From assembly GCF_964188315.1 (NCBI RefSeq), contig NC_135655.1, positions 46,190,001 through 46,254,000 on the forward strand: a stretch of 64,000 nt of DNA, read 5' to 3'. The first letter of the stretch is position 1, and each line of letters begins with the position of its first letter. This DNA is from Podarcis muralis. Its lineage: Eukaryota. The notes beneath the pieces are model-generated. The model saw only the letters and a program-made list of their open reading frames with translations. It made no database searches and had not been told where the DNA came from. Made by a program: the position numbers and the translations under genes. Positions 1 to 30,700 of this stretch are shown here, piece after piece.

Positions 1-1191
1 AGGTAGTCCATTCCACTTTTGAGTAGCTCTTTCTGTCATCTTTACATATTTTCTGATTTAAAGGATCAGTACATTTTAGACCACAGGCAAAACATGAAAA
101 TAACCCTTATACAACTCACATTTGCAGTCAATCTTAAGAGTATAGAGAAAATACATTTTTGCATTTCTTATTCTTATACTTTCCATATATTGTTTACCTC
201 ACTAGTTCTGAAAATGATGCGGTAATTGTATTGCGATCCATTTTCTTTTATTTCTTCAGGTTTTTCTCTTCTGATGCTGACAGCTACAGGACCAAGGTTC
301 TCATCTGCCCCAAAGTAGTTCCAGTGTTCTTGTGCATTTAAAAAAAGGGGTGCGGGAGGAGAAAAAATTATTTTCCATCTCAGAAAAAAAGGATTCTGTA
401 TGTTACATTTTGCATAGTAAGTAAAGGATTAAGGACAGTTTTGTTCTACATGTGAGCAAGTTCCAACCATCCATGGGCACATGCTCACATGGGCAAATGT
501 AGCATGCACATACAGCTGGGAAACAATTCTAAAGATTTTGGTGATACTCATTCTAACCGCTGTGATAACAGAAACTGCTACCAGTTGTAGCTATGAACAT
601 CTGGTTCACATGCTCAGTGTAATATTTGAATGTTGTAAAGCACAAAACCTTCTTCCAGGTATAGCAAACATTTTCCCAACCTACAGGCTGAGGTCCGTGT
701 TCTATATTAAAGGCACACCAGAATTATGTTAATTATACCCCCCTTTCTAGAACAGTAAGAAGAATTGTGTCAACTGGGGATTTGGAAAAACCTTTTAGTA
801 CAATGAAATACATTATAATAGAGAAACCTCCATTTGACCATTTTAATACATGTTTTACAATGCTGTGGGTGCCAGAACATTCGCACAGTCCCTGTTAAAC
901 AAGTTTTAATTACATTTCCATTTCCAAAATATTTTTAAAACCTCGGCATCTTTCTGTAGATTGTGCCTTTCGATTTGGTCTCGTTCCATGTACATGTTAG
1001 AAGACTGCCTAAACTATAAAGTCTAAAAAAATCCCTGTCATATTATTAAAAAGCAAATTGCAAAATTTAAGTGTTTGTATGAATTATGCCTAGAATGATC
1101 AAGGAACATTCTGTGCAGCAGGCAGTACTTGGAGAACATTTTGTAAAATAGGAAAGAATAATGCTATTCAAGGTATTAAATGATTGCTCAC

Positions 1192-2680
1192 CTTTCTGAT
1201 AGAAGAATTTACGATAATAATATGCACCAAGATCCACGTGTTCAACGATGTATCTCTTCCCTCTATCCAAGTGCAAGACCAGGTTTTCCTTGGGTACTTC
1301 AAGAACAGCCACTCCTGCATTTGTGCAATGAGAGCTAAGAGTGGACTCAAAAGAGGCACTTTCACAGCCACTGAAGGATCCAGAGTTAGATTTTGTGAGA
1401 CTGATCTTTCTTTCTCCTTCCCCACCAATCTCATTACGAAAATAAGGACAACTCATAACAAGGTCATTGCTTTTATCGTCTCCCTGGTCCATATTGAGAC
1501 TTCCTTTGGAATTCAGGTCTTCTGTACTGCCCATTGGGGAATTGAAACTTGCAGAATGGGACAATGGTCCAGAAGCTAATGATGCAACTGCTGCAGCAGA
1601 AGCTCCAGTCGTTGTATTCCTTCGTTTGATCACATTGTGCCGGTTAACTGCCACTTCATTTAAATCAAATAATATGCTCTGGCAATCGTAATGGGCAAAA
1701 CACTTTGGACAAGTCCAAGGCCTGACACTGTCTTCTGATCTGCTGTCCTCAAGATCTGAGGACTTCCCAAGATCCCCTTCAGCTTTGGCATTACGCAGCT
1801 TTCGAAAAATGGAAGAATCTCCTGTCTCTGATTTTGAACGCCTCTTCAGTGGCTTCTCCCTTTCTTTAAATAGTCGAAGGTTCTCCCTCTGAGTTATGGG
1901 TCCATCTATCACATCCAAGGAAAATCCTGAGCCCTTACTTCCACTAGCTATAAGGAGTTCACAGAATTTGCTGGTGCCTGGACCTCTCTGGTCAGATTTT
2001 TCATCTTTAAAACTTTTCAACAGGTCAAAAAAACCTTCCCCTGAAGTACCCTGCTTATCTATTGATGAAGTGCTGCCATATTCCCTGTGCAGTGATGGTC
2101 CAGATTTATAACTGGGCGAGATACATTCATCATAGCTATCTACATCAAGCTCACTTAGGGTAATGTCACTATTACTTCGCTGTCTTATTCTGCGAAGAGC
2201 TTTTCTTGGGGAGCTGTGGTATCCATCAGGAGTGAGAAACCTAGAATCTAGGTTCTCAGACTGCCTTGTTTTGCTCTTAAGTGTGTTTTGGATACTCTTT
2301 AACATGACAGAGTCACTAGAATTCAAGTTAATAGAGCTCCCCTGGCTCCCAGGACTGCTTTTTGAAGACATACTATCAAGGCAGCTTGATGTATCCATTT
2401 CTTGACTTGATCTACTATTTTCTTTGACATTTTCCTTCCTTGGGGGCCAGTCAGCAATCCTGGCCCTAACCCCCATTTTAGGTACTCCAGGAGTAGATGT
2501 AAGGTGATGAGACCCTTCATTGCGTGGAGGGCCTACTGGAGCCATCACTGAAGATCCCAAGCTACCATTCTGTGACCTGAAGCGTCTCATATAAAAGTCA
2601 TCTGAGTGGACTTTAGGAGTTCCATCTGACACTCCGGTGGCAACAGCCCTTTCAGTCTGGGACCGCTTCAAACTGGTCAT
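1192..2680 (-). CDS. SIPA1L1: First coding exon of signal-induced proliferation-associated 1-like protein 1 (N-terminal 496 codons, SPAR N-terminal region before the RapGAP domain); gene continues beyond the left edge
   Basis: Translation [10 protein letters not shown]...[35 protein letters not shown]...[20 protein letters not shown]...[16 protein letters not shown] matches recalled vertebrate SIPA1L1. The ORF track runs to 1067, but a canonical phase-1 donor (AAA G|GTGAGC) lies at 1192/1191; the last 41 aa of the track ORF are intron read-through. Confidence 0.95.
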
Positions 2681-3039
2681 TATTGGAAAACGTGTTTATC
2701 CTTAGTAAGCTCCAAAAGAAAACACAGCCATCTCTGCCTTTCACATTTATAACTCTCTTCCGAAGAAGGTTATCCAGAAAACACAAAGGTTGCATGAGAT
2801 CCCAGTTATGATCATGTAATATAATGGCAAATGTTCTACAGATGCAGCTTTTCTACACTTGATCTTAGCCAAAAGGCCGAGAAGCGATAGCTTTTCTACG
2901 AACGACCGTTGTTCAATCACTTTTGACTTCTTAGAAGTCTTAATCCGTCCATTTCAAAAAGTAGTCATCCTTCCATACGTCAAAAAATAATAATCTTCGT
3001 TTGAAGAATGAACTTTCAACTGGTAAACTTGCTTTAATC
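2681..3039 (-). other. SIPA1L1: 5'UTR portion of the SIPA1L1 first coding exon (exon 1192-3039, 1848 nt)
   Basis: Minus strand reads ctttctcttctttatttgctctag|GATTAAAG: polypyrimidine tract plus AG acceptor at 3041/3040. Size is consistent with the ~1.8-kb first coding exon recalled for mammals. Confidence 0.75.
2853..2888 (-). pseudogene. RNU2: Tailless U2 snRNA retro-fragment (U2 nt 1-36) flanked by an 11-bp direct repeat
   Basis: Reverse complement of 2853-2888 is ATCGCTTCTCGGCCTTTTGGCTAAGATCAAGTGTAG, the U2 snRNA 5' end. AGCTTTTCTAC occurs at 2846-2856 and 2889-2899. Confidence 0.95.
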
Positions 3040-5744
3040 CTAGAGCAAATAAAGAAGAGAAAGTGATTAGCCAGCACATTCACAGTTATATACAGCAGAA
3101 AAGTGAAAGCTTCAATACAGTAGTTGCTTTCTCAGTACATTTCACCACAAAGATCAGCGATTGATACCTAACATACTGTATTTTACAGCTTTGAATGCAG
3201 AATGATGTAAGTTACTTTTCAATATATACAACAGACTTCTCTCTAGATCAACAAGCTATAGGAAAGCTATTACCATCTATACATATGTAGAAAGAACAGA
3301 TGTGCTTCTCAATTAGGAGATACTGAGTTGGATCCAAACTGCTGTTCTGCCAGTGGAAAGCACTTTTGGTTCTGTACTGTGGGACTCTCCACCCCCTATT
3401 TTTGGCAATTGCTCCTTTTCCCTTCTCATGTCACTCTGTTCCAGAGAGTCCTCCAACCCTCAATAGAAGATTGGGGGGGGGGGGGGGACACAGGAGACTG
3501 CAGAGGAAAGGAGGAAGCATGAAAGCTCCATTTTGTAAACATTTATGGAATGGGACTTACTTAGGATTCAAGCCATTCTTAGCAGATTGCCTATTGATTA
3601 CATGTATGCTTTAGGAAGACCAGGTGTAAATTTTGAGTTTTTGCATGGAGTAGTCAGGATTGATTTTGACTGCTGAACCAGGCTGCTACTGCTGGTTACT
3701 ATCCCAAGGACAGACCTGAGAAGCAATTCCTTTTCATCTATTTATTAGTTACTATCATTATCATGGCTATTATTATTATTCACTGCTTGGTTTTCTACTC
3801 AAAATTCAGAAGACACCTTAAAAAAGACGTATCTTGAAGCTCAGCAGTAGCAGCAAAGTGAAATGAAAGTCAGTTACAATATTTCAGGAAAAAGCTCTTC
3901 ATAAATTGCATGAAAGCAGTTTTTGAAATGTAAATGACCACCCAAGACTGGGATCAAAATGTGTGAGGGCTTAACCCTCCTCTGATCACAGCCCCAAAGA
4001 AAATGTCCCTCCTCCCCAAACAAAAGAAAAGCTAAAAATACCTTGAGTGATATATATTTTTTTTTGGGGGGGGGGGTAACAGTGGATAGGAAGAGTTGAA
4101 GAGTTAATCCCCCCCCCATGAGCATGGACCTGATCCTGTTCACTTGGCTCACCTTGTGGCAGCTATCTACATTTCAAAAACTGCACATCAATTATTTTCA
4201 CACAATTAATGTAGCAAAGCTGATGTGACTACCGAGAAGATGTTGCTGCAAATCACCAATCTCACTTCCAAAACTAGGACCAACTCTGGGTTTTGTGAAG
4301 CCCTTGGCACGATGATTTGGGTAGGCTCTCCTCTCCAGTGACACCTGTCTTTGGTGCCTGCGGCATTGGGTCATTTGCCTCCCTGCTGGCTGTTCTTTCA
4401 CTCACCAAGAGGGTGAAGAAATGAATAGGTAGTGGAGAGAGGCAGCAGCAGTTTGTGAGGGCTCTTTGTGAGTGGCTCCTCCTGATGTGCTGGGGTTGCA
4501 ACTACCATTAAAAGATTCCGACCCCTGGCTGAAAATGAGACAACACAAGGCAGATATTCCTCTGCCAAGCTCAGAGAATAAGAAAAAGGAAGGGCCAAGT
4601 CATTTCCCACTCTCCTGACCAGTGTCCCTATGTGGAGCTGACTAATCAGGAGGTGGGATACCCTGGGGGAATAGTGTGCTGGGTAAGATGCCCCCCCAAG
4701 CAGGCTATGTGCCCTGCCCTGGCAGTGCCAATCTCGTTAGAGATGGCTTAGATCGCCCCTTTCCCCCAGATCATCAAAAAGAGATCCCTACTTGAAAGCA
4801 GGAGCCACAATTACTAGGTCCATAAAATTCTGAAAGAAACCAGAGTAGGGGAATAAAAGAAGGGTGAACACTGAGTAAGTTCCTGGAGTTTGCTTCTGAG
4901 CAAATTTCAAAGGTGGCCAATGAAGGCCCAAGTCAACCTTCTGGACGATGACTAGGAAGTCTTCCCAGAGCATTTCTCCTTGTAAACCTTGGCATAGGTT
5001 AGTGTTCAGAGATGACTCAAGACATTTTGCTGACGGCAGAATATCCAAATGTCACCTTCATTGTGCCAAATATATAATAATAATCTGATAGTTAACAGTA
5101 GACTTCCAAATGAGGCTTGCTCAGCCTATTACAAAGCTGGTCTTACTAGCTTCATGTTCCCAAACTTATTTTCCTCTCTCATCCCTTCTACCCACCATCC
5201 CAAATCTTCTTCTCATCCCCAAATTGGAACTCTGTTTGCATAAGCAAGCTCTTACTGCTAATGGCTGGCAGTGCAAGAATCGTCACAGAGAAGTTTTAAG
5301 CTGGAGCCATAGAGCAGACCCCTGATAACTGCCAGGCTGGATACAGCCTGCCAACCATTTATTGCTGCTCCCCTGTTTCTGCTATTCTAAGCAAACAAAA
5401 GTAGTTTTCTAAGACCTTAGTAGCCCACAATACATGGTTAGTGGGCTGTATCTGGCGTGATGGTTCACAAATTATCCAAGTCATCAATGTGCTTAACACA
5501 TTTGCTTAGCACCAGTGGGACTCCAAACAGCCAAGTGGTACTCTGGTGTGAGAAAAAGTATTGCTCAGAACAATTTATCGCAGCATTTCCCCCACGAGCG
5601 GCTATAAAAATACAAATGGAGTTTTGCATGTGCAACTGAGTTTTCAACTTCCTTTCTAGCACAGCCCCTTGCACCTTCTGAAAAATGGCTTCTGAAGGTC
5701 AAGGAACCTTCTGGAACAGCATGGGATGCAGTTCTGGGACCATA

Positions 5745-25227: not shown

Positions 25228-25950
25228 TATGCTTTTCAAGGCTCAAATTAAATCTACCGGATTTGATTTTTACTTAGATCCCTTGGAAAAACAAATATTG
25301 TGTATATGTGTGCTTTTTCTCTATCTTTCTCTGGCTGATCCAGGTTAGGGGGTGTGGATAGAAGTGGTTGTGCATGATTTAGTACCCAAGGCACTAAAGC
25401 AAAAAACCCCCAAATGTGTCCATGGGTCTAAAACATTCTGTTTTCAGCTTCTCAAATTCAAATGAGTCAGCTTAAAAGTTTGAGCCTAGGCGAAACTTTA
25501 CACATGCACCTCAACCTAAAGTTTACCTAATCTTAGGCTATGGAACAAAAGCATCTGAACTGGAACCTAGACTGTGGCTTCATCTTTTCCATTTATGTCA
25601 GCATGAGGGCACAGCCACAAAAAAATGGTAAAGGTGCATAAAACAGAATCCTGCTGGCTAAAACCATGTGGTAGTTTCTCCTTTTGAAAGATATTTATTT
25701 TTAAAGTACCGTATTTTTCGCACCATAGGGCGCACCGGACCATAGGGCGCACCCAGTTTTTAGGGGGGGAAATCAAGAAAAAAATCTTTCCCCCCCCCCC
25801 AGACCCAAAGAGCAGCGTACAGGGTGCGCACAACCTCTCCCTGCTGGAGGGGTTGCGAGCAGCTATGGAGCAAGCCAAGTTTTGGCTTCCCCTTTAGCCC
25901 CATGCAGCCTCTCCTTGCCGGGAGACGCTGCACAGGGCTAAAGAAGCCAT

Positions 25951-27400
25951 AGCCCCATGCAGCCTCTCCTTGCGGAGGGGTTGCGCGCGGCTATGGAAGA
26001 AGGCAAGGCAGCGAGCGGGATGGATCCCGCTCGCTGTTTTGCCTTCCCCTTTAGCCCCGCGCAGCCTCTCCTTGCGGAGGGGTTGCGCGCGGCTATGGAA
26101 GAAGGCAAGGCAGCGAGCGGGATGGATCCCGCTCGCTGTTTTGCCTTCCCCTTTAGCCCCGCGCAGCCTCTCCTTGCGGAGGGGTTGCGCGCGGCTATGG
26201 AAGAAGGCAAGGCAGCGAGCGGGATGGATCCCGCTCGCTGCCTTGCCTTCCCCTTTAGCCCCGCGCAGCCTCTCCTTGCGGAGGGGTTACGCGCGGCTAT
26301 GGAAGAAGGCAAGGCAGCGAGCGGGATGGATCCCGCTCGCTGCCTTGCCTTCCCCTTTAGCCCCGCGCAGCCTCTCCTTGCGGAGGGGTTGCGCGCGGCT
26401 ATGGAAGAAGGCAAGGCAGCGAGCGGGATGGATCCCGCTCGCTGCCTTGCCTTCCCCTTTAGCCCCGCGCAGCCTCTCCTTGCGGAGGGGTTGCGCGCGG
26501 CTATGGAAGAAGGCAAGGCAGCGAGCGGGATGGATCCCGCTCGCTGCCTTGCCTTCCCCTTTAGCCCCGCGCAGCCTCTCCTTGCGGAGGGGTTACGCGC
26601 GGCTATGGAAGAAGGCAAGGCAGCGAGCGGGATGGATCCCGCTCGCTGCCTTGCCTTCCCCTTTAGCCCCGCGCAGCCTCTCCTTGCGGAGGGGTTACGC
26701 GCGGCTATGGAAGAAGGCAAGGCAGCGAGCGGGATGGATCCCGCTCGCTGCCTTGCCTTCCCCTTTAGCCCCGCGCAGCCTCTCCTTGCGGAGGGGTTGC
26801 GCGCGGCTATGGAAGAAGGCAAGGCAGCGAGCGGGATGGATCCCGCTCGCTGTTTTGCCTTCTCCTTAAGCCCCGCGCAGCCTCTCCTTGCGGAGGGGTT
26901 GCGCGCGGCTATGGAAGAAGGCAAGGCAGCGAGCGGGATCCATCCCGCTCGCTGCCTTGCCTTCCCCTTTAGCCCCGCGCAGCCTCTCCTTGCGGAGGGG
27001 TTGCGCGCGGCTATGGAAGAAGGCAAGGCAGCGAGCGGGATGGATCCCGCTCGCTGCCTTGCCTTCCCCTTTAGCCCCGCGCAGCCTCTCCTTGCGGAGG
27101 GGTTGCGCGCGGCTATGGAAGAAGGCAAGGCAGCGAGCGGGATCCATCCTGCTCGCTGTTTTGCCTTCCCCTTTAGCCCCGCGCAGCCTCTCCTTGCGGA
27201 GGGGTTGCGCGCGGCTATGGAAGAAGGCAAGGCAGCGAGCGGGATGGATCCCGCTCGCTGTTTTGCCTTCTCCTTTAGCCCCGCGCAGCCTCTCCTTGCG
27301 GAGGGGTTGCGCGCGGCTATGGAAGAAGGCAAGGCAGCGAGCGGGATGGATCCCGCTCGCTGTTTTGCCTTCCCCTTTAGCCCCGCGCAGCCTCTCCTTG
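25951..27400. repeat. Minisatellite, 14 copies of a 102-bp GC/CpG-rich unit, each containing a 23-bp-arm palindrome
   Basis: Unit ...GAAGGCAAGGCAGCGAGCGGGAT-GG-ATCCCGCTCGCTGCCTTGCCTTC...; 34-aa periodicity repeated 14 times in the ORF track (25957-27495). Confidence 0.97.
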
Positions 27401-27420
27401 CCGGGAGATGCTGCGCAGGG

Positions 27421-27720
27421 CTTTCCTGGCTTTTCTGGGAGGTGGGGGAATTCCCCCACCTCCCGCAAAACCGGCAGAAGCCGCGCGCACTTTAAAAGGG
27501 CTGCACGGCTTCTTCTGGCTTTCCTGGGAGGTGGGGGGATTCCCTCACCTCTCGCAAAAGCCCGCAGAAGCCGTGAGCTCTTTAAAGGGGCTGCGCGGCT
27601 TCTCCTGGCTTTTCTGGGAGGTGGGGGAATTCCCCCACCTCCCGCAAAACCGGCAGAAGCCGCGTGCACTTTAAAAGGGCTGCACGGCTTCTCCTGGCTT
27701 TCCTGGGAGGTGGGAGAAGG
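27421..27720. repeat. Second minisatellite, ~3.3 copies of a ~90-bp unit containing a 28-bp perfect palindrome
   Basis: GGGAGGTGGGGGAATTCCCCCACCTCCC at 27437-27464 and 27616-27643; degenerate copy near 27526-27553. Confidence 0.9.
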
Positions 27721-30700
27721 GACTGATGCGGCCAGTCAGTCCCTTCTCCCTCCTGTGGAAAAGCCCGCAAGAGCGCACGGAGCTTGTGTGCGGCTCTTGG
27801 GGGCTTTTCCCGCCTGCCTCCCCCCCTGCATTCGCTCCATAGGACGCACACACATTTTCCCTTGCTTTTTAGGAGGGAAAAAGTGCGTCCTATGGTGCGA
27901 AAAATACGGTAATCCAATTACTATACATCACTTGAGTTTAGTCATTTTGTGATATTGCAGCAGAACCTCCCTCCTGTCCATATAATTTAGTTCATTATGG
28001 AATGTTATTATACTTGTTGGCTTTGCACATCGCATTTTCATTCTAACGTACAACTTAATCCCACCAAATCAATTTGCTGAAAAGGGGGATTTGAAAAACT
28101 TCGAGGCAACAAATTAAACATTTTAAATTTGTTTTTCTCATGCTGATTTGAACCAGGAATAATACTTTTTTTAAAAAAAAATTACAAAACATATCATACA
28201 AGAACAAAAGAAGTGCCAAACTAACACCACCCAATGGTCACTGGTATGAGGCTTAGACACACACAAAAAGAAATGCACAAAGAAGAAGAAAAGTTAGCCT
28301 TGCTTTCAGCTATGTTTGTTTTGCTGTAAACACAGTACAGCAGTGAGAAACGAAGCATATGGCAAAACAGTATCCCATTGCCAGCCTAATTTCACATAAG
28401 ATAAAGCAAAAACCAGTAAGCAACCAAACTGACCTCCAAAAAATTAAAATTCATTATACAGAAATTATTATTGTGTCAATCTCTATTTATTCAGGATAAA
28501 ATGAAGAAGCAGTCTGCAAAGATCTCTGAGGTGATTTTTTACCTTTACTGAGGACCAAAATTACTATCTAAAGGCACCCAATTATATAGACTGCATGAAG
28601 TCATGATCAGGTATCATTAATTATGAAAAGGCCTCAAGATCTTTCACTAATACACATGATGATAGAGGAAAGAACAAGGGATCATCTCTAAATCTTACAT
28701 CTTCAAAAGAGGAATACACTCTACCACAGTTGGCCCTCATTTAGCAAAACTTTTTTTAAAAAAAACACCTTTGATTTCCAATTGCAGCATTCTGAGATTA
28801 TACACCTGTCTTTTTTTTGAACCAGATAAACTCGCAAAGAGATTTCCTTTTGATTGCAACAACAAATACGCTTCACTACCCCACCCCCAACCTGTCAACC
28901 CTCTGGTTAAAAACTTGTCGTGCAACTGAATGTCAAAATGCAGTAAGCCTGCATGCAGCAATGCCTTCATGTTTCATGGCGTATTAAAAATACGCTGTTG
29001 AGCATCAAATAAGCATTTGCTGTGCAAGTGTTCCCTTTGCACCTCGCTTTGAAGGTTCAAAGAAAGCTATTACGGCCTACTTCTCTAAAACATTACACAC
29101 CGCAGTAAACACTGAAAGTTAAAAGGATAGATAAAAGAGATTCAGATGGCAGCTTTTCTTTAAAAAAAAAATGTAGTACTGAACATAGATGTAGAAATAA
29201 GAGATTTGTTACCATAGAAATATCAGATAAACTCTGATAACTGTTTGGCAATTATTATATATATATTCTTTGGCAATTATTATTGTTCCAGAAGAGTGCT
29301 ACTACATTGTTTCACAGCAGTGCAATTGTCATGCAGCTCACTGCCAACTGCAGCATTCTGCTGTGTGTGAATGGTGTTACTTTAATCATCCTCAGCATCT
29401 CACAATACTAACATTTGGGCTTAAAAAACCCCGATAATTAAAATGAGAACAACGTTCCTATGTTGTCAATGGTATATTGGAGAAAAAGGACTAGTACAAG
29501 TGGTATGTGGGCATGTAATGGCTGATGCAGACAAAGATTCATACCCAGCAATGTTTCCCTTCTGCTACCAGCAATAAACTGTTCCCCTGCTAGAAACAAA
29601 GGGATCAGCTCCCCATGCAATCGTACCCACTGGGGAAGAAAAAGTGCTTCTTGCTTTTATAGGAACTTGTCCCAGTATACTTGTTACTAGTAAACGTACT
29701 TCTGCGTCTACTCCCGAACATGGCTTCAGAGAACTTCTCTTTCATTTTCTCTTTGCAGTTAGAAAAGCCCATCCATAATATTTTCTCCTTTGGGACCTAC
29801 CAATTCTACACAATTAAATGTGCATCACTGTATCTACCCTTAGGATTTCAATGCAGGTTTGAGCAGGTAATAGGAATGAGCGCATTTTACATAAGTTGTG
29901 TCAAACAGGGTTGTACTGAAAGATTACTGGGTTGTTGCTATTTTTAGTTCAATGCCTGCTTTCCAGAAACAAGACAAATGTCAGTAAATTCCTCCAGATT
30001 TCAGCACCTCTGATTGGCACCAAGCTTTTGCATTTCTGTGCTTCAGGGTGCACTACTGATTCAGTCATAACATACAGTATAAAGTTGAAAAGCAAGCAAG
30101 GAAGCACCTATTTTCTGCAAGCTAGAATTTCCAGCCACACTTACAATGAACTAGGTCCAGCTAATTTCATCAGGGCTACCTTCCAAGTAGGTGTGATCAC
30201 ACCACAGCCCAAGACAATTAGTTCTCTGTTTTGCTCAAAGAATGCATAAATGAACAGCCGAACAGCGGTTGGAATAAATTCTAACAAGCTCATGTCCATG
30301 ATATTATTCTGCAGATTAATAGCCAGCTGGGCTGTACTGAAAGCCCAGATGGTTATTAATCTACAGGAAATGTCCAGCAGCCAGCTTAGTGCTATTTTAA
30401 GATGTACAGAAAATGTTTAGATACCATATGCTTCGTTTCCAGCTGCATCCAACGTTCCTGAAGTTGATGAGTATATATTAAATACGATGAGCGTATTTAG
30501 AGACTCGTCAGGTTCTCCCTTTGGCTTACCGGTTACTTTAAGAACATCTGAAAAGGCAAGTGATGTCTAGGAGGGAAGGGCTAGATTTGCAATAGTAAAA
30601 ACTTGTGGCCCAGATTTAAATAACCAAGCGTGCCAGCAGAAGGGCTTCTACTAGCACAGTGGGGCCTTCCTCTCCTCTTCTCCTGCCGATGTCTCCCAAA

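What the first reader, a model, noticed from the sequence alone, without database searches (positions are those of the whole stretch)
2846..2899. U2 snRNA 5' fragment inserted, sense-oriented, inside the SIPA1L1 5'UTR exon, apparently primed at the branch-point recognition sequence
Seen: exact U2 nt 1-36 on the mRNA strand, no poly(A), flanked by an 11-bp duplication (AGCTTTTCTAC). The last 4 nt of the left repeat (CTAC) are complementary to U2 nt 33-36 (GUAG). Known: tailless/truncated U2 retrocopies exist in vertebrates; U2 nt 1-36 hold stem-loop I, the U6-pairing segments and the start of the branch-point recognition motif GUAGUA. Inference: a LINE RT used the nicked target end to prime directly on the single-stranded branch-recognition region. 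The mature SIPA1L1 mRNA would now carry 43 extra nt forming a U2 stem-loop I and U6-complementary tract upstream of its AUG, which could alter scanning or splicing. The perfect identity suggests a very recent, possibly polymorphic insertion.
Basis: partly seen in the sequence, partly recalled or inferred. Interest (0 to 1): 0.75.

Follow-up and report, generated by a model that had tools for sequence, protein, structure and literature searches.

The report
Tailless U2 retrocopy in SIPA1L1 5'UTR
A 32-36 base copy of the start of the U2 splicing RNA, flanked by an 11-base target duplication, was pasted into the untranslated leader of a lizard SIPA1L1 gene; it is an ordinary member of a published class of "tailless" RNA retrocopies and probably has no effect.

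Summary
On the minus strand, U2 nt 1-32 (2888-2857) lie between two perfect copies of GTAGAAAAGCT (2899-2889 and 2856-2846). The first four bases of the downstream copy continue U2 to nt 36. There is no A-tail.

The gene is SIPA1L1, with its ATG at 2680 on the minus strand. Six other squamates, including a skink and a viper, lack the insert. They share a conserved splice acceptor (AG at 3041-3040), which places the insert about 150 nt inside the 5'UTR part of the first coding exon.

The proposed mechanism, LINE reverse transcription primed inside U2 by microhomology, is the published model for tailless or 3'-truncated snRNA retropseudogenes (Noll 2015; Doucet 2015). In the green anole 63-64 such U2 copies are listed, and their commonest length is 36 nt. 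The kind and the breakpoint are therefore already known.

The insert adds no upstream ATG, breaks no upstream ORF and adds only a hairpin of about -10 kcal/mol, so a functional effect is unlikely.

"Very recent or polymorphic" is not shown. This scan has already noted other U2 and 7SK tailless copies elsewhere in this genome.

The parts
2889..2899 (-). Upstream (5') copy of the 11-bp target-site duplication, GTAGAAAAGCT on the minus strand
   Evidence: D1, 100% identity, spacing 43
2857..2888 (-). U2 snRNA nt 1-32: starts exactly at U2 nt 1 and contains stem-loop I
   Evidence: Rfam RF00004; identical to the U2 consensus in Noll 2015 Table S10
2853..2856 (-). GTAG: both U2 nt 33-36 and the first 4 nt of the downstream duplication. 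This is the microhomology at the 3' junction and the presumed priming site.
   Evidence: model
2846..2856 (-). Downstream (3') copy of the 11-bp target-site duplication
3040..3062 (-). Pyrimidine tract plus AG (3041-3040): the 3' splice acceptor of the first coding exon, whose first base is 3039
   Evidence: Conserved in all seven squamate sequences; similarity collapses upstream of it. Not confirmed by RNA reads.
2681..3039 (-). 5'UTR part of the SIPA1L1 first coding exon, which holds the insert
   Evidence: Indirect: RNA-like contig sets hold 0.66-0.71 of the words of 2300-3300, and the exon share would be about 0.73.
1190..2680 (-). Coding part of the SIPA1L1 first coding exon (ATG at 2680-2678; the 3' end is approximate)

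Best explanation
This is a tailless (3'-truncated, A-tail-free) U2 snRNA retropseudogene. Inferred steps: a LINE endonuclease/reverse transcriptase, most likely of the relaxed L1 type, nicked the strand that is the window's + strand. The freed 3' end ...TTTTCTAC paired with GUAG (nt 33-36) in the single-stranded branch-point-recognition region of a U2 RNA. Reverse transcription then ran off at the capped 5' end, nt 1. A staggered second nick 11 bp away and fill-in produced the GTAGAAAAGCT duplication. Shown directly: the anatomy of the insert and its absence in relatives. The insertion landed in the least conserved, indel-rich part of the 5'UTR of the SIPA1L1 first coding exon. That spot is 166 nt upstream of the ATG and 31 nt upstream of a conserved cluster of upstream ORFs. 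The insert is most likely a neutral passenger carried in the mRNA.
For: The copy starts exactly at U2 nt 1 and ends at nt 32-36 with no A-tail. It has a perfect 11-bp duplication and a 4-nt overlap between the RNA end and the duplication. Six other squamate loci, including the skink Prasinohaema and the viper Macrovipera, lack the 43 nt. Three of them carry one copy of a motif resembling the duplicated sequence at that spot. Published class: Noll 2015 reports tailless retropseudogenes with duplications, truncated in single-stranded regions, with target complementarity; human has 666 U2 copies and the green anole 63-64. Of the 59 anole U2 copies listed in Table S6 part 9, 12 are 36 nt long (the commonest length) and 42 are 31-41 nt. 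Doucet 2015 reports that 3'-truncated snRNA copies with duplications and 3'-junction microhomology make up 65% of human snRNA copies, explained by L1 'template choice', and finds 3'-truncated U6 copies in Anolis. The insert adds no uATG, cuts no uORF, and the isolated 36-nt hairpin is predicted at -10.4 kcal/mol.
Against: The nick implied by the longest duplication (C/GTAG...) is not the L1 consensus TT/AAAA, although an A4 core follows 4 nt later. The LINE family responsible cannot be told, since Doucet 2015 found L1, L2 and RTE elements all forming snRNA chimeras in Anolis. No RNA reads were seen, so exon inclusion rests on conservation of the acceptor and on word shares. The closest relatives available are only 88-91% identical in the coding exon, so an exact empty site was not seen.
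Confidence: 0.85

Rival explanations
1. The piece was captured by DNA double-strand-break repair (end joining at a staggered break) as a U2 cDNA or RNA-templated patch, independent of a LINE endonuclease.
For: The implied cleavage site is not a textbook L1 site. A 4-nt microhomology is also typical of end joining.
Against: A clean 11-bp duplication, a start exactly at U2 nt 1 and a breakpoint at the commonest position of the LINE-associated class are what target-primed reverse transcription predicts. End joining usually gives no duplication of this length (established knowledge).
Confidence: 0.07
2. The insert is an exapted regulatory element. The U2 hairpin or U6-complementary tract in the SIPA1L1 leader alters scanning, splicing or RNA-protein binding and is kept by selection, or it segregates as a functional polymorphism.
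For: It is in sense orientation inside a leader that is otherwise strongly conserved and rich in uORFs. The predicted 5'UTR folding energy changes from -69.2 to -83.3 kcal/mol.
Against: The insert sits in the one poorly conserved, indel-rich stretch of the leader. It adds no uATG, changes no uORF, and its hairpin is weak. Hairpins of this strength far from the cap do not block scanning (established knowledge from Kozak's hairpin experiments, recalled and not tested). Hundreds of identical neutral copies exist in other genomes.
Confidence: 0.05
3. The insert is an assembly or sequencing artefact, such as a chimeric read joining U2 cDNA or DNA to the locus.
For: The read-level check could not be run. 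The runs holding 0.99 of the words may be the assembly's own source.
Against: An artefact would not create a perfect 11-bp duplication of the target around the piece. The RNA-like contig sets X15 and X16, from two other studies, hold 0.71 of the words. That is above the roughly 0.67 expected for the exon without the insert, though this evidence is weak.
Confidence: 0.02
4. It is an old full-length U2 pseudogene with internal deletions, as the end-to-end Rfam alignment (2888-2765) suggests.
For: Rfam aligns model positions 1-192.
Against: The stretch 2845-2765 is present and conserved in six squamates that have no U2 piece. The first 36 nt are perfect, while the rest would be almost unrecognisable.
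Confidence: 0.01

Closest known systems
Tailless retropseudogenes derived from U2 snRNA (Schmitz et al. 2004; Noll et al. 2015, PMC5322556)
   Same: Full-length at the 5' end, truncated in a single-stranded region, no oligo(A), flanking duplication, and target complementarity at the 3' junction. The length of 32-36 nt matches the commonest length in the anole (36 nt). The class has been reported in a lizard.
   Different: The host is another squamate lineage than Anolis. The duplication starts with G after a C, rather than following TT/WAAAA. This copy lies inside a 5'UTR exon of a conserved gene.
3'-truncated snRNA processed pseudogenes: Group II of Doucet et al. 2015 (PMC4476161); Class III of Denison and Weiner 1982
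   Same: Truncation in a single-stranded segment, short homology at the 3' junction, a flanking duplication, and the proposed L1 'template choice' mechanism.
   Different: That class was defined mainly on human copies. The partner LINE here is unknown.
snRNA/LINE chimeras (U6/L1 template switching; twin-priming U1/U2/U5-L1 chimeras, Doucet 2015)
   Same: The same RNA source and the same reverse-transcription machinery. This scan's notes report a 36-base U2 piece in such a chimera elsewhere in this genome.
   Different: No LINE, SINE or mRNA segment lies within the duplication here. The U2 piece stands alone.
SINEU elements: SINEs with U1- or U2-derived heads (Kojima 2015, PMC4494074)
   Same: They contain the 5' part of U2.
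   Different: SINEU elements have a body and a LINE-derived tail and amplify as a family. This is a bare 32-36 nt piece.

Membership tests
Tailless / 3'-truncated snRNA retropseudogene | Begins at nt 1 of the source RNA | tested here: met
   Window 2888 is U2 nt 1, directly after the duplication
Tailless / 3'-truncated snRNA retropseudogene | 3' end lies inside the RNA, in a single-stranded segment | tested here: met
   It ends at nt 32-36. The Rfam consensus structure marks these positions as unpaired. This is the commonest breakpoint in anole copies.
Tailless / 3'-truncated snRNA retropseudogene | No oligo(A) tail | tested here: met
Tailless / 3'-truncated snRNA retropseudogene | Flanking target-site duplication (8-35 nt in Noll 2015) | tested here: met
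   11/11
Tailless / 3'-truncated snRNA retropseudogene | Complementarity between the target and the RNA at the 3' junction | tested here: met
   4 nt, GTAG
Tailless / 3'-truncated snRNA retropseudogene | L1-type target (TT/WAAAA) and dependence on an L1 reverse transcriptase | tested here: inconclusive
   The target reads TTC/GTAGAAAAGCT. An A4 core is present but offset. One site cannot name the LINE, and the enzyme is not testable here.
Tailless / 3'-truncated snRNA retropseudogene | Empty orthologous site in relatives | tested here: met
   Six squamate loci lack the 43 nt. They are distant relatives, so an exact empty site was not seen.
Functional U2 snRNA gene | Full RNA with branch-point sequence, Sm site and 3' stem-loops | tested here: not met
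   Only nt 1-36 are present. The remainder of the Rfam alignment is conserved 5'UTR.
SINEU (U2-headed SINE) | U2 head followed by a SINE body and LINE-like tail within the duplication | tested here: not met
   The duplication encloses 32 nt only.
snRNA/LINE chimera | A LINE, SINE or mRNA segment joined to the snRNA inside one duplication | tested here: not met

The most novel reading that the evidence does not exclude
The insertion is young and still segregating in this lizard species, and the filled allele measurably changes SIPA1L1 translation or 5'UTR processing. That would make it a natural case of a spliceosomal-RNA fragment acting within an mRNA leader, just upstream of a conserved uORF cluster.
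Probability: 0.05. Interest if true: 0.5.

Novelty: new member of a known kind. Interest (0 to 1): 0.15.

Why it matters
It matters little by itself. It is one more copy of a class with hundreds of members per genome. It has three modest uses. It supports the idea that the relaxed LINE retroposition able to prime inside small RNAs, reported outside mammals only for the green anole, also operated in this lizard's lineage. A 43-bp presence/absence site in an easily amplified exon is a clean phylogenetic or population marker. It also shows that the distal part of the SIPA1L1 leader tolerates insertions while the proximal uORF block does not vary.

Tried and rejected
No depth, junction or allele data exist. 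Orthologues were fetched through the coding-exon protein (1067-2680), and all comparisons across the site were local alignments in the closed script machine.

2. The look-up of encoding contigs with the window's own exon protein found nothing on record, so there are no same-species contigs. P0131's contig had no DNA available.

3. L008, a spliced transcript from a more distant vertebrate, shares only the proximal leader block, so it could not map the acceptor.

4. The Rfam 'evalue' hits snoU2-30 (22.6 bits against a gathering score of 60) and CRISPR-DR21 are chance matches or trivial complementarity.

5. The word shares of DNA runs (0.86-0.92) fit either a few SNPs or an empty allele and decide nothing.

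6. No LINE open reading frame lies in the window, so the window gives no hint of the partner element.

7. Mammalian clusters P0003 and P0004 were deliberately not fetched.

Full report
**Observation**

On the minus strand the window reads GTAGAAAAGCT (2899-2889), then 32 bases (2888-2857), then GTAGAAAAGCT again (2856-2846). The repeat finder reports the 11/11 direct repeat with start-to-start spacing 43.

The 32 bases plus the next GTAG equal the first 36 nt of vertebrate U2 snRNA. They match the Anolis and mammalian consensus sequences printed in Noll 2015 Table S10 at every position. After nt 36 the sequence departs from U2.

Rfam's U2 model is the only family reaching its gathering score in the 64 kb window (46.1 bits, E 4.9e-06, minus strand). 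There is no A-run at the 3' junction.

One correction is needed. Rfam's alignment runs on to 2765 as if a whole, deleted U2 were present. That stretch is conserved SIPA1L1 leader in species without any U2 piece, so only nt 1-32/36 come from U2.

**Context**

A 537-codon ORF on the minus strand starts at 2680. Its best named relatives are bird proteins named SI1L1 (91% identity) and a whale SIPA1-like protein (87%). The ESM Atlas places it in the SIPA1L family. The gene is SIPA1L1, and the U2 piece is in sense orientation, 166-208 nt upstream of the ATG.

I listed the 90% cluster of its best hit and fetched seven contigs of other squamates by exact protein look-up. Two runs are identified in papers:
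- SRR31508491 is the skink Prasinohaema aff. flavipes.
- SRR32478113 is the viper Macrovipera lebetinus.

The coding exon is 88-91% identical to the window at the DNA level, so these are distant relatives. Alignments were made locally in the script machine.

**Result of the comparison**

1. All six loci with enough upstream DNA lack the U2 piece. The gap covers the insert plus one repeat copy.
2. At that spot L003, L005 and L002 carry one copy of a motif resembling the duplicated sequence (GGTAGCTAAAAGTT, GTTAACTAAAAGTT and TTTAAAAGAGTT). This is what a target-site duplication predicts.
3. A pyrimidine tract plus AG (window 3041-3040), followed by G-W-TWAARG..., is conserved in all seven sequences. 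Similarity collapses upstream of it. This is the 3' splice acceptor of the first coding exon, so the exon starts at 3039 and the insert lies about 150 nt inside it.
4. The insert sits in the only poorly conserved, indel-rich stretch of this leader. The 165 nt between it and the ATG are 77-83% identical across squamates.

There is also indirect support for transcription of the whole leader. Four small, RNA-like contig sets of the same species hold 0.66-0.71 of the sampled words of 2300-3300. The exon part would give about 0.73, and about 0.67 without the insert (my arithmetic). This is weak evidence and does not replace reads.

**Mechanism**

The piece starts exactly at the RNA's first nucleotide. 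That points to a run-off reverse transcript rather than copied DNA. It ends in the single-stranded region between stem-loop I and stem-loop IIa, has no A-tail, carries an 11-bp duplication and overlaps its target by 4 nt.

This matches the published model in every feature.
- Noll et al. 2015 describe 'tailless retropseudogenes' with duplications. They are truncated at defined single-stranded positions, with target sites complementary to the RNA's new 3' end, and are explained by internal priming during L1 target-primed reverse transcription.
- In that study U2 is a main source, with 666 copies in human and 63-64 in the green anole, the only non-mammal in which they were found.
- Among the 59 anole U2 copies in Table S6 part 9, the commonest length is 36 nt (12 copies), and 42 copies are 31-41 nt long.
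- Doucet et al. 2015 independently describe 3'-truncated snRNA pseudogenes. They make up 65% of human snRNA copies, are truncated in single-stranded purine-rich segments, show 3'-junction microhomology and are attributed to L1 'template choice'. They also found 3'-truncated U6 copies and U6 chimeras with L1, L2 and RTE elements in Anolis.

Truncation at GUAG is the known major breakpoint.

What remains inferred is the identity of the LINE. The nick implied by the longest duplication (TTC/GTAG AAAA...) is not the L1 consensus and does not show the Bov-B 'Tn-TA' signature. One site cannot decide.

**Function**

With or without the 43 nt, the leader has the same seven upstream ATGs and the same uORFs. 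The insert lies between the stop of the third uORF and the next uATG. It adds no ATG and no in-frame change.

The isolated 36 nt fold to -10.4 kcal/mol, and the core four pairs of stem-loop I have probability 0.9-1.0 in the context of the leader. A hairpin of that strength in the middle of a 360-nt leader is not expected to hinder scanning; this rests on established knowledge and was not tested here. I see no basis for an effect on splicing. The most likely status is a neutral passenger.

**Age**

Zero changes in 32 U2 sites plus 2 x 11 duplication sites bound the age only loosely. At 1-2e-9 substitutions per site per year, the 95% upper limit is about 28-55 million years (my calculation).

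Absence in a skink, a viper and four other squamates only says the insertion is younger than those deep splits. 'Very recent or polymorphic' is possible but unsupported. The word shares of other individuals' DNA runs (0.86-0.92) fit a few SNPs as well as an empty allele.

**Rivals**

- Break-repair capture of a U2 cDNA is not excluded. It explains the 11-bp duplication and the canonical breakpoint less well.
- An assembly artefact would not duplicate the target.
- A decayed full-length U2 pseudogene is refuted by the conserved leader downstream of the insert.
- A U2-headed SINE and an snRNA/LINE chimera are excluded, because the duplication encloses nothing but the 32 nt.

**Earlier notes of this scan**

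These are unchecked AI notes. They report further U2 pieces in this genome: a 36-base piece in a twin-priming chimera, a U2/L1 chimera and a U2/Bov-B chimera. They also report tailless 7SK copies. These agree with an active relaxed retroposition system here, but I could not test them.

**Verdict**

The feature is real and correctly described, with a correctly inferred but already published mechanism. It is a new member of a known kind. The only particular point is its place inside a conserved gene's 5'UTR exon, which is probably without consequence. 

Noticed in passing
window 2652-2815, minus strand: There are three upstream ORFs at fixed distances from the SIPA1L1 ATG (-135, -115, -51). They are conserved in position in all seven squamates compared. 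The second (47 codons here, 47-60 in relatives) overlaps the main ATG out of frame and has a conserved peptide (MQPL.FLENLL.KRV...). A more distant vertebrate transcript (L008) keeps only part of this block. This suggests conserved translational control of SIPA1L1.
   Followed up: partly
window 2765-2845, minus strand: Rfam's U2 model reaches its gathering score (46.1 against 46) only by aligning this conserved 5'UTR to the 3' half of U2. A short true fragment can be reported as a 'full-length' hit with model positions 1-192.
   Followed up: yes
window 2825-2872, plus strand: There is a weak Rfam match to snoU2-30 (22.6 bits, gathering score 60). It arises because the antisense of the U2 piece resembles the guide region of a U2-modifying small RNA. 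It is not a gene.
   Followed up: yes
window 25709-27952: Long overlapping ORFs on both strands coincide with the hairpin-repeat array inside a transposon that an earlier follow-up of this scan described. They are repeat artefacts, not genes.
   Followed up: no
window 2900-2945 versus L001-L006: The distal leader differs among squamates by several indels of 10-60 nt around the insertion point (snakes L004 and L006 lack about 60 nt there). This spot tolerates length change.
   Followed up: partly
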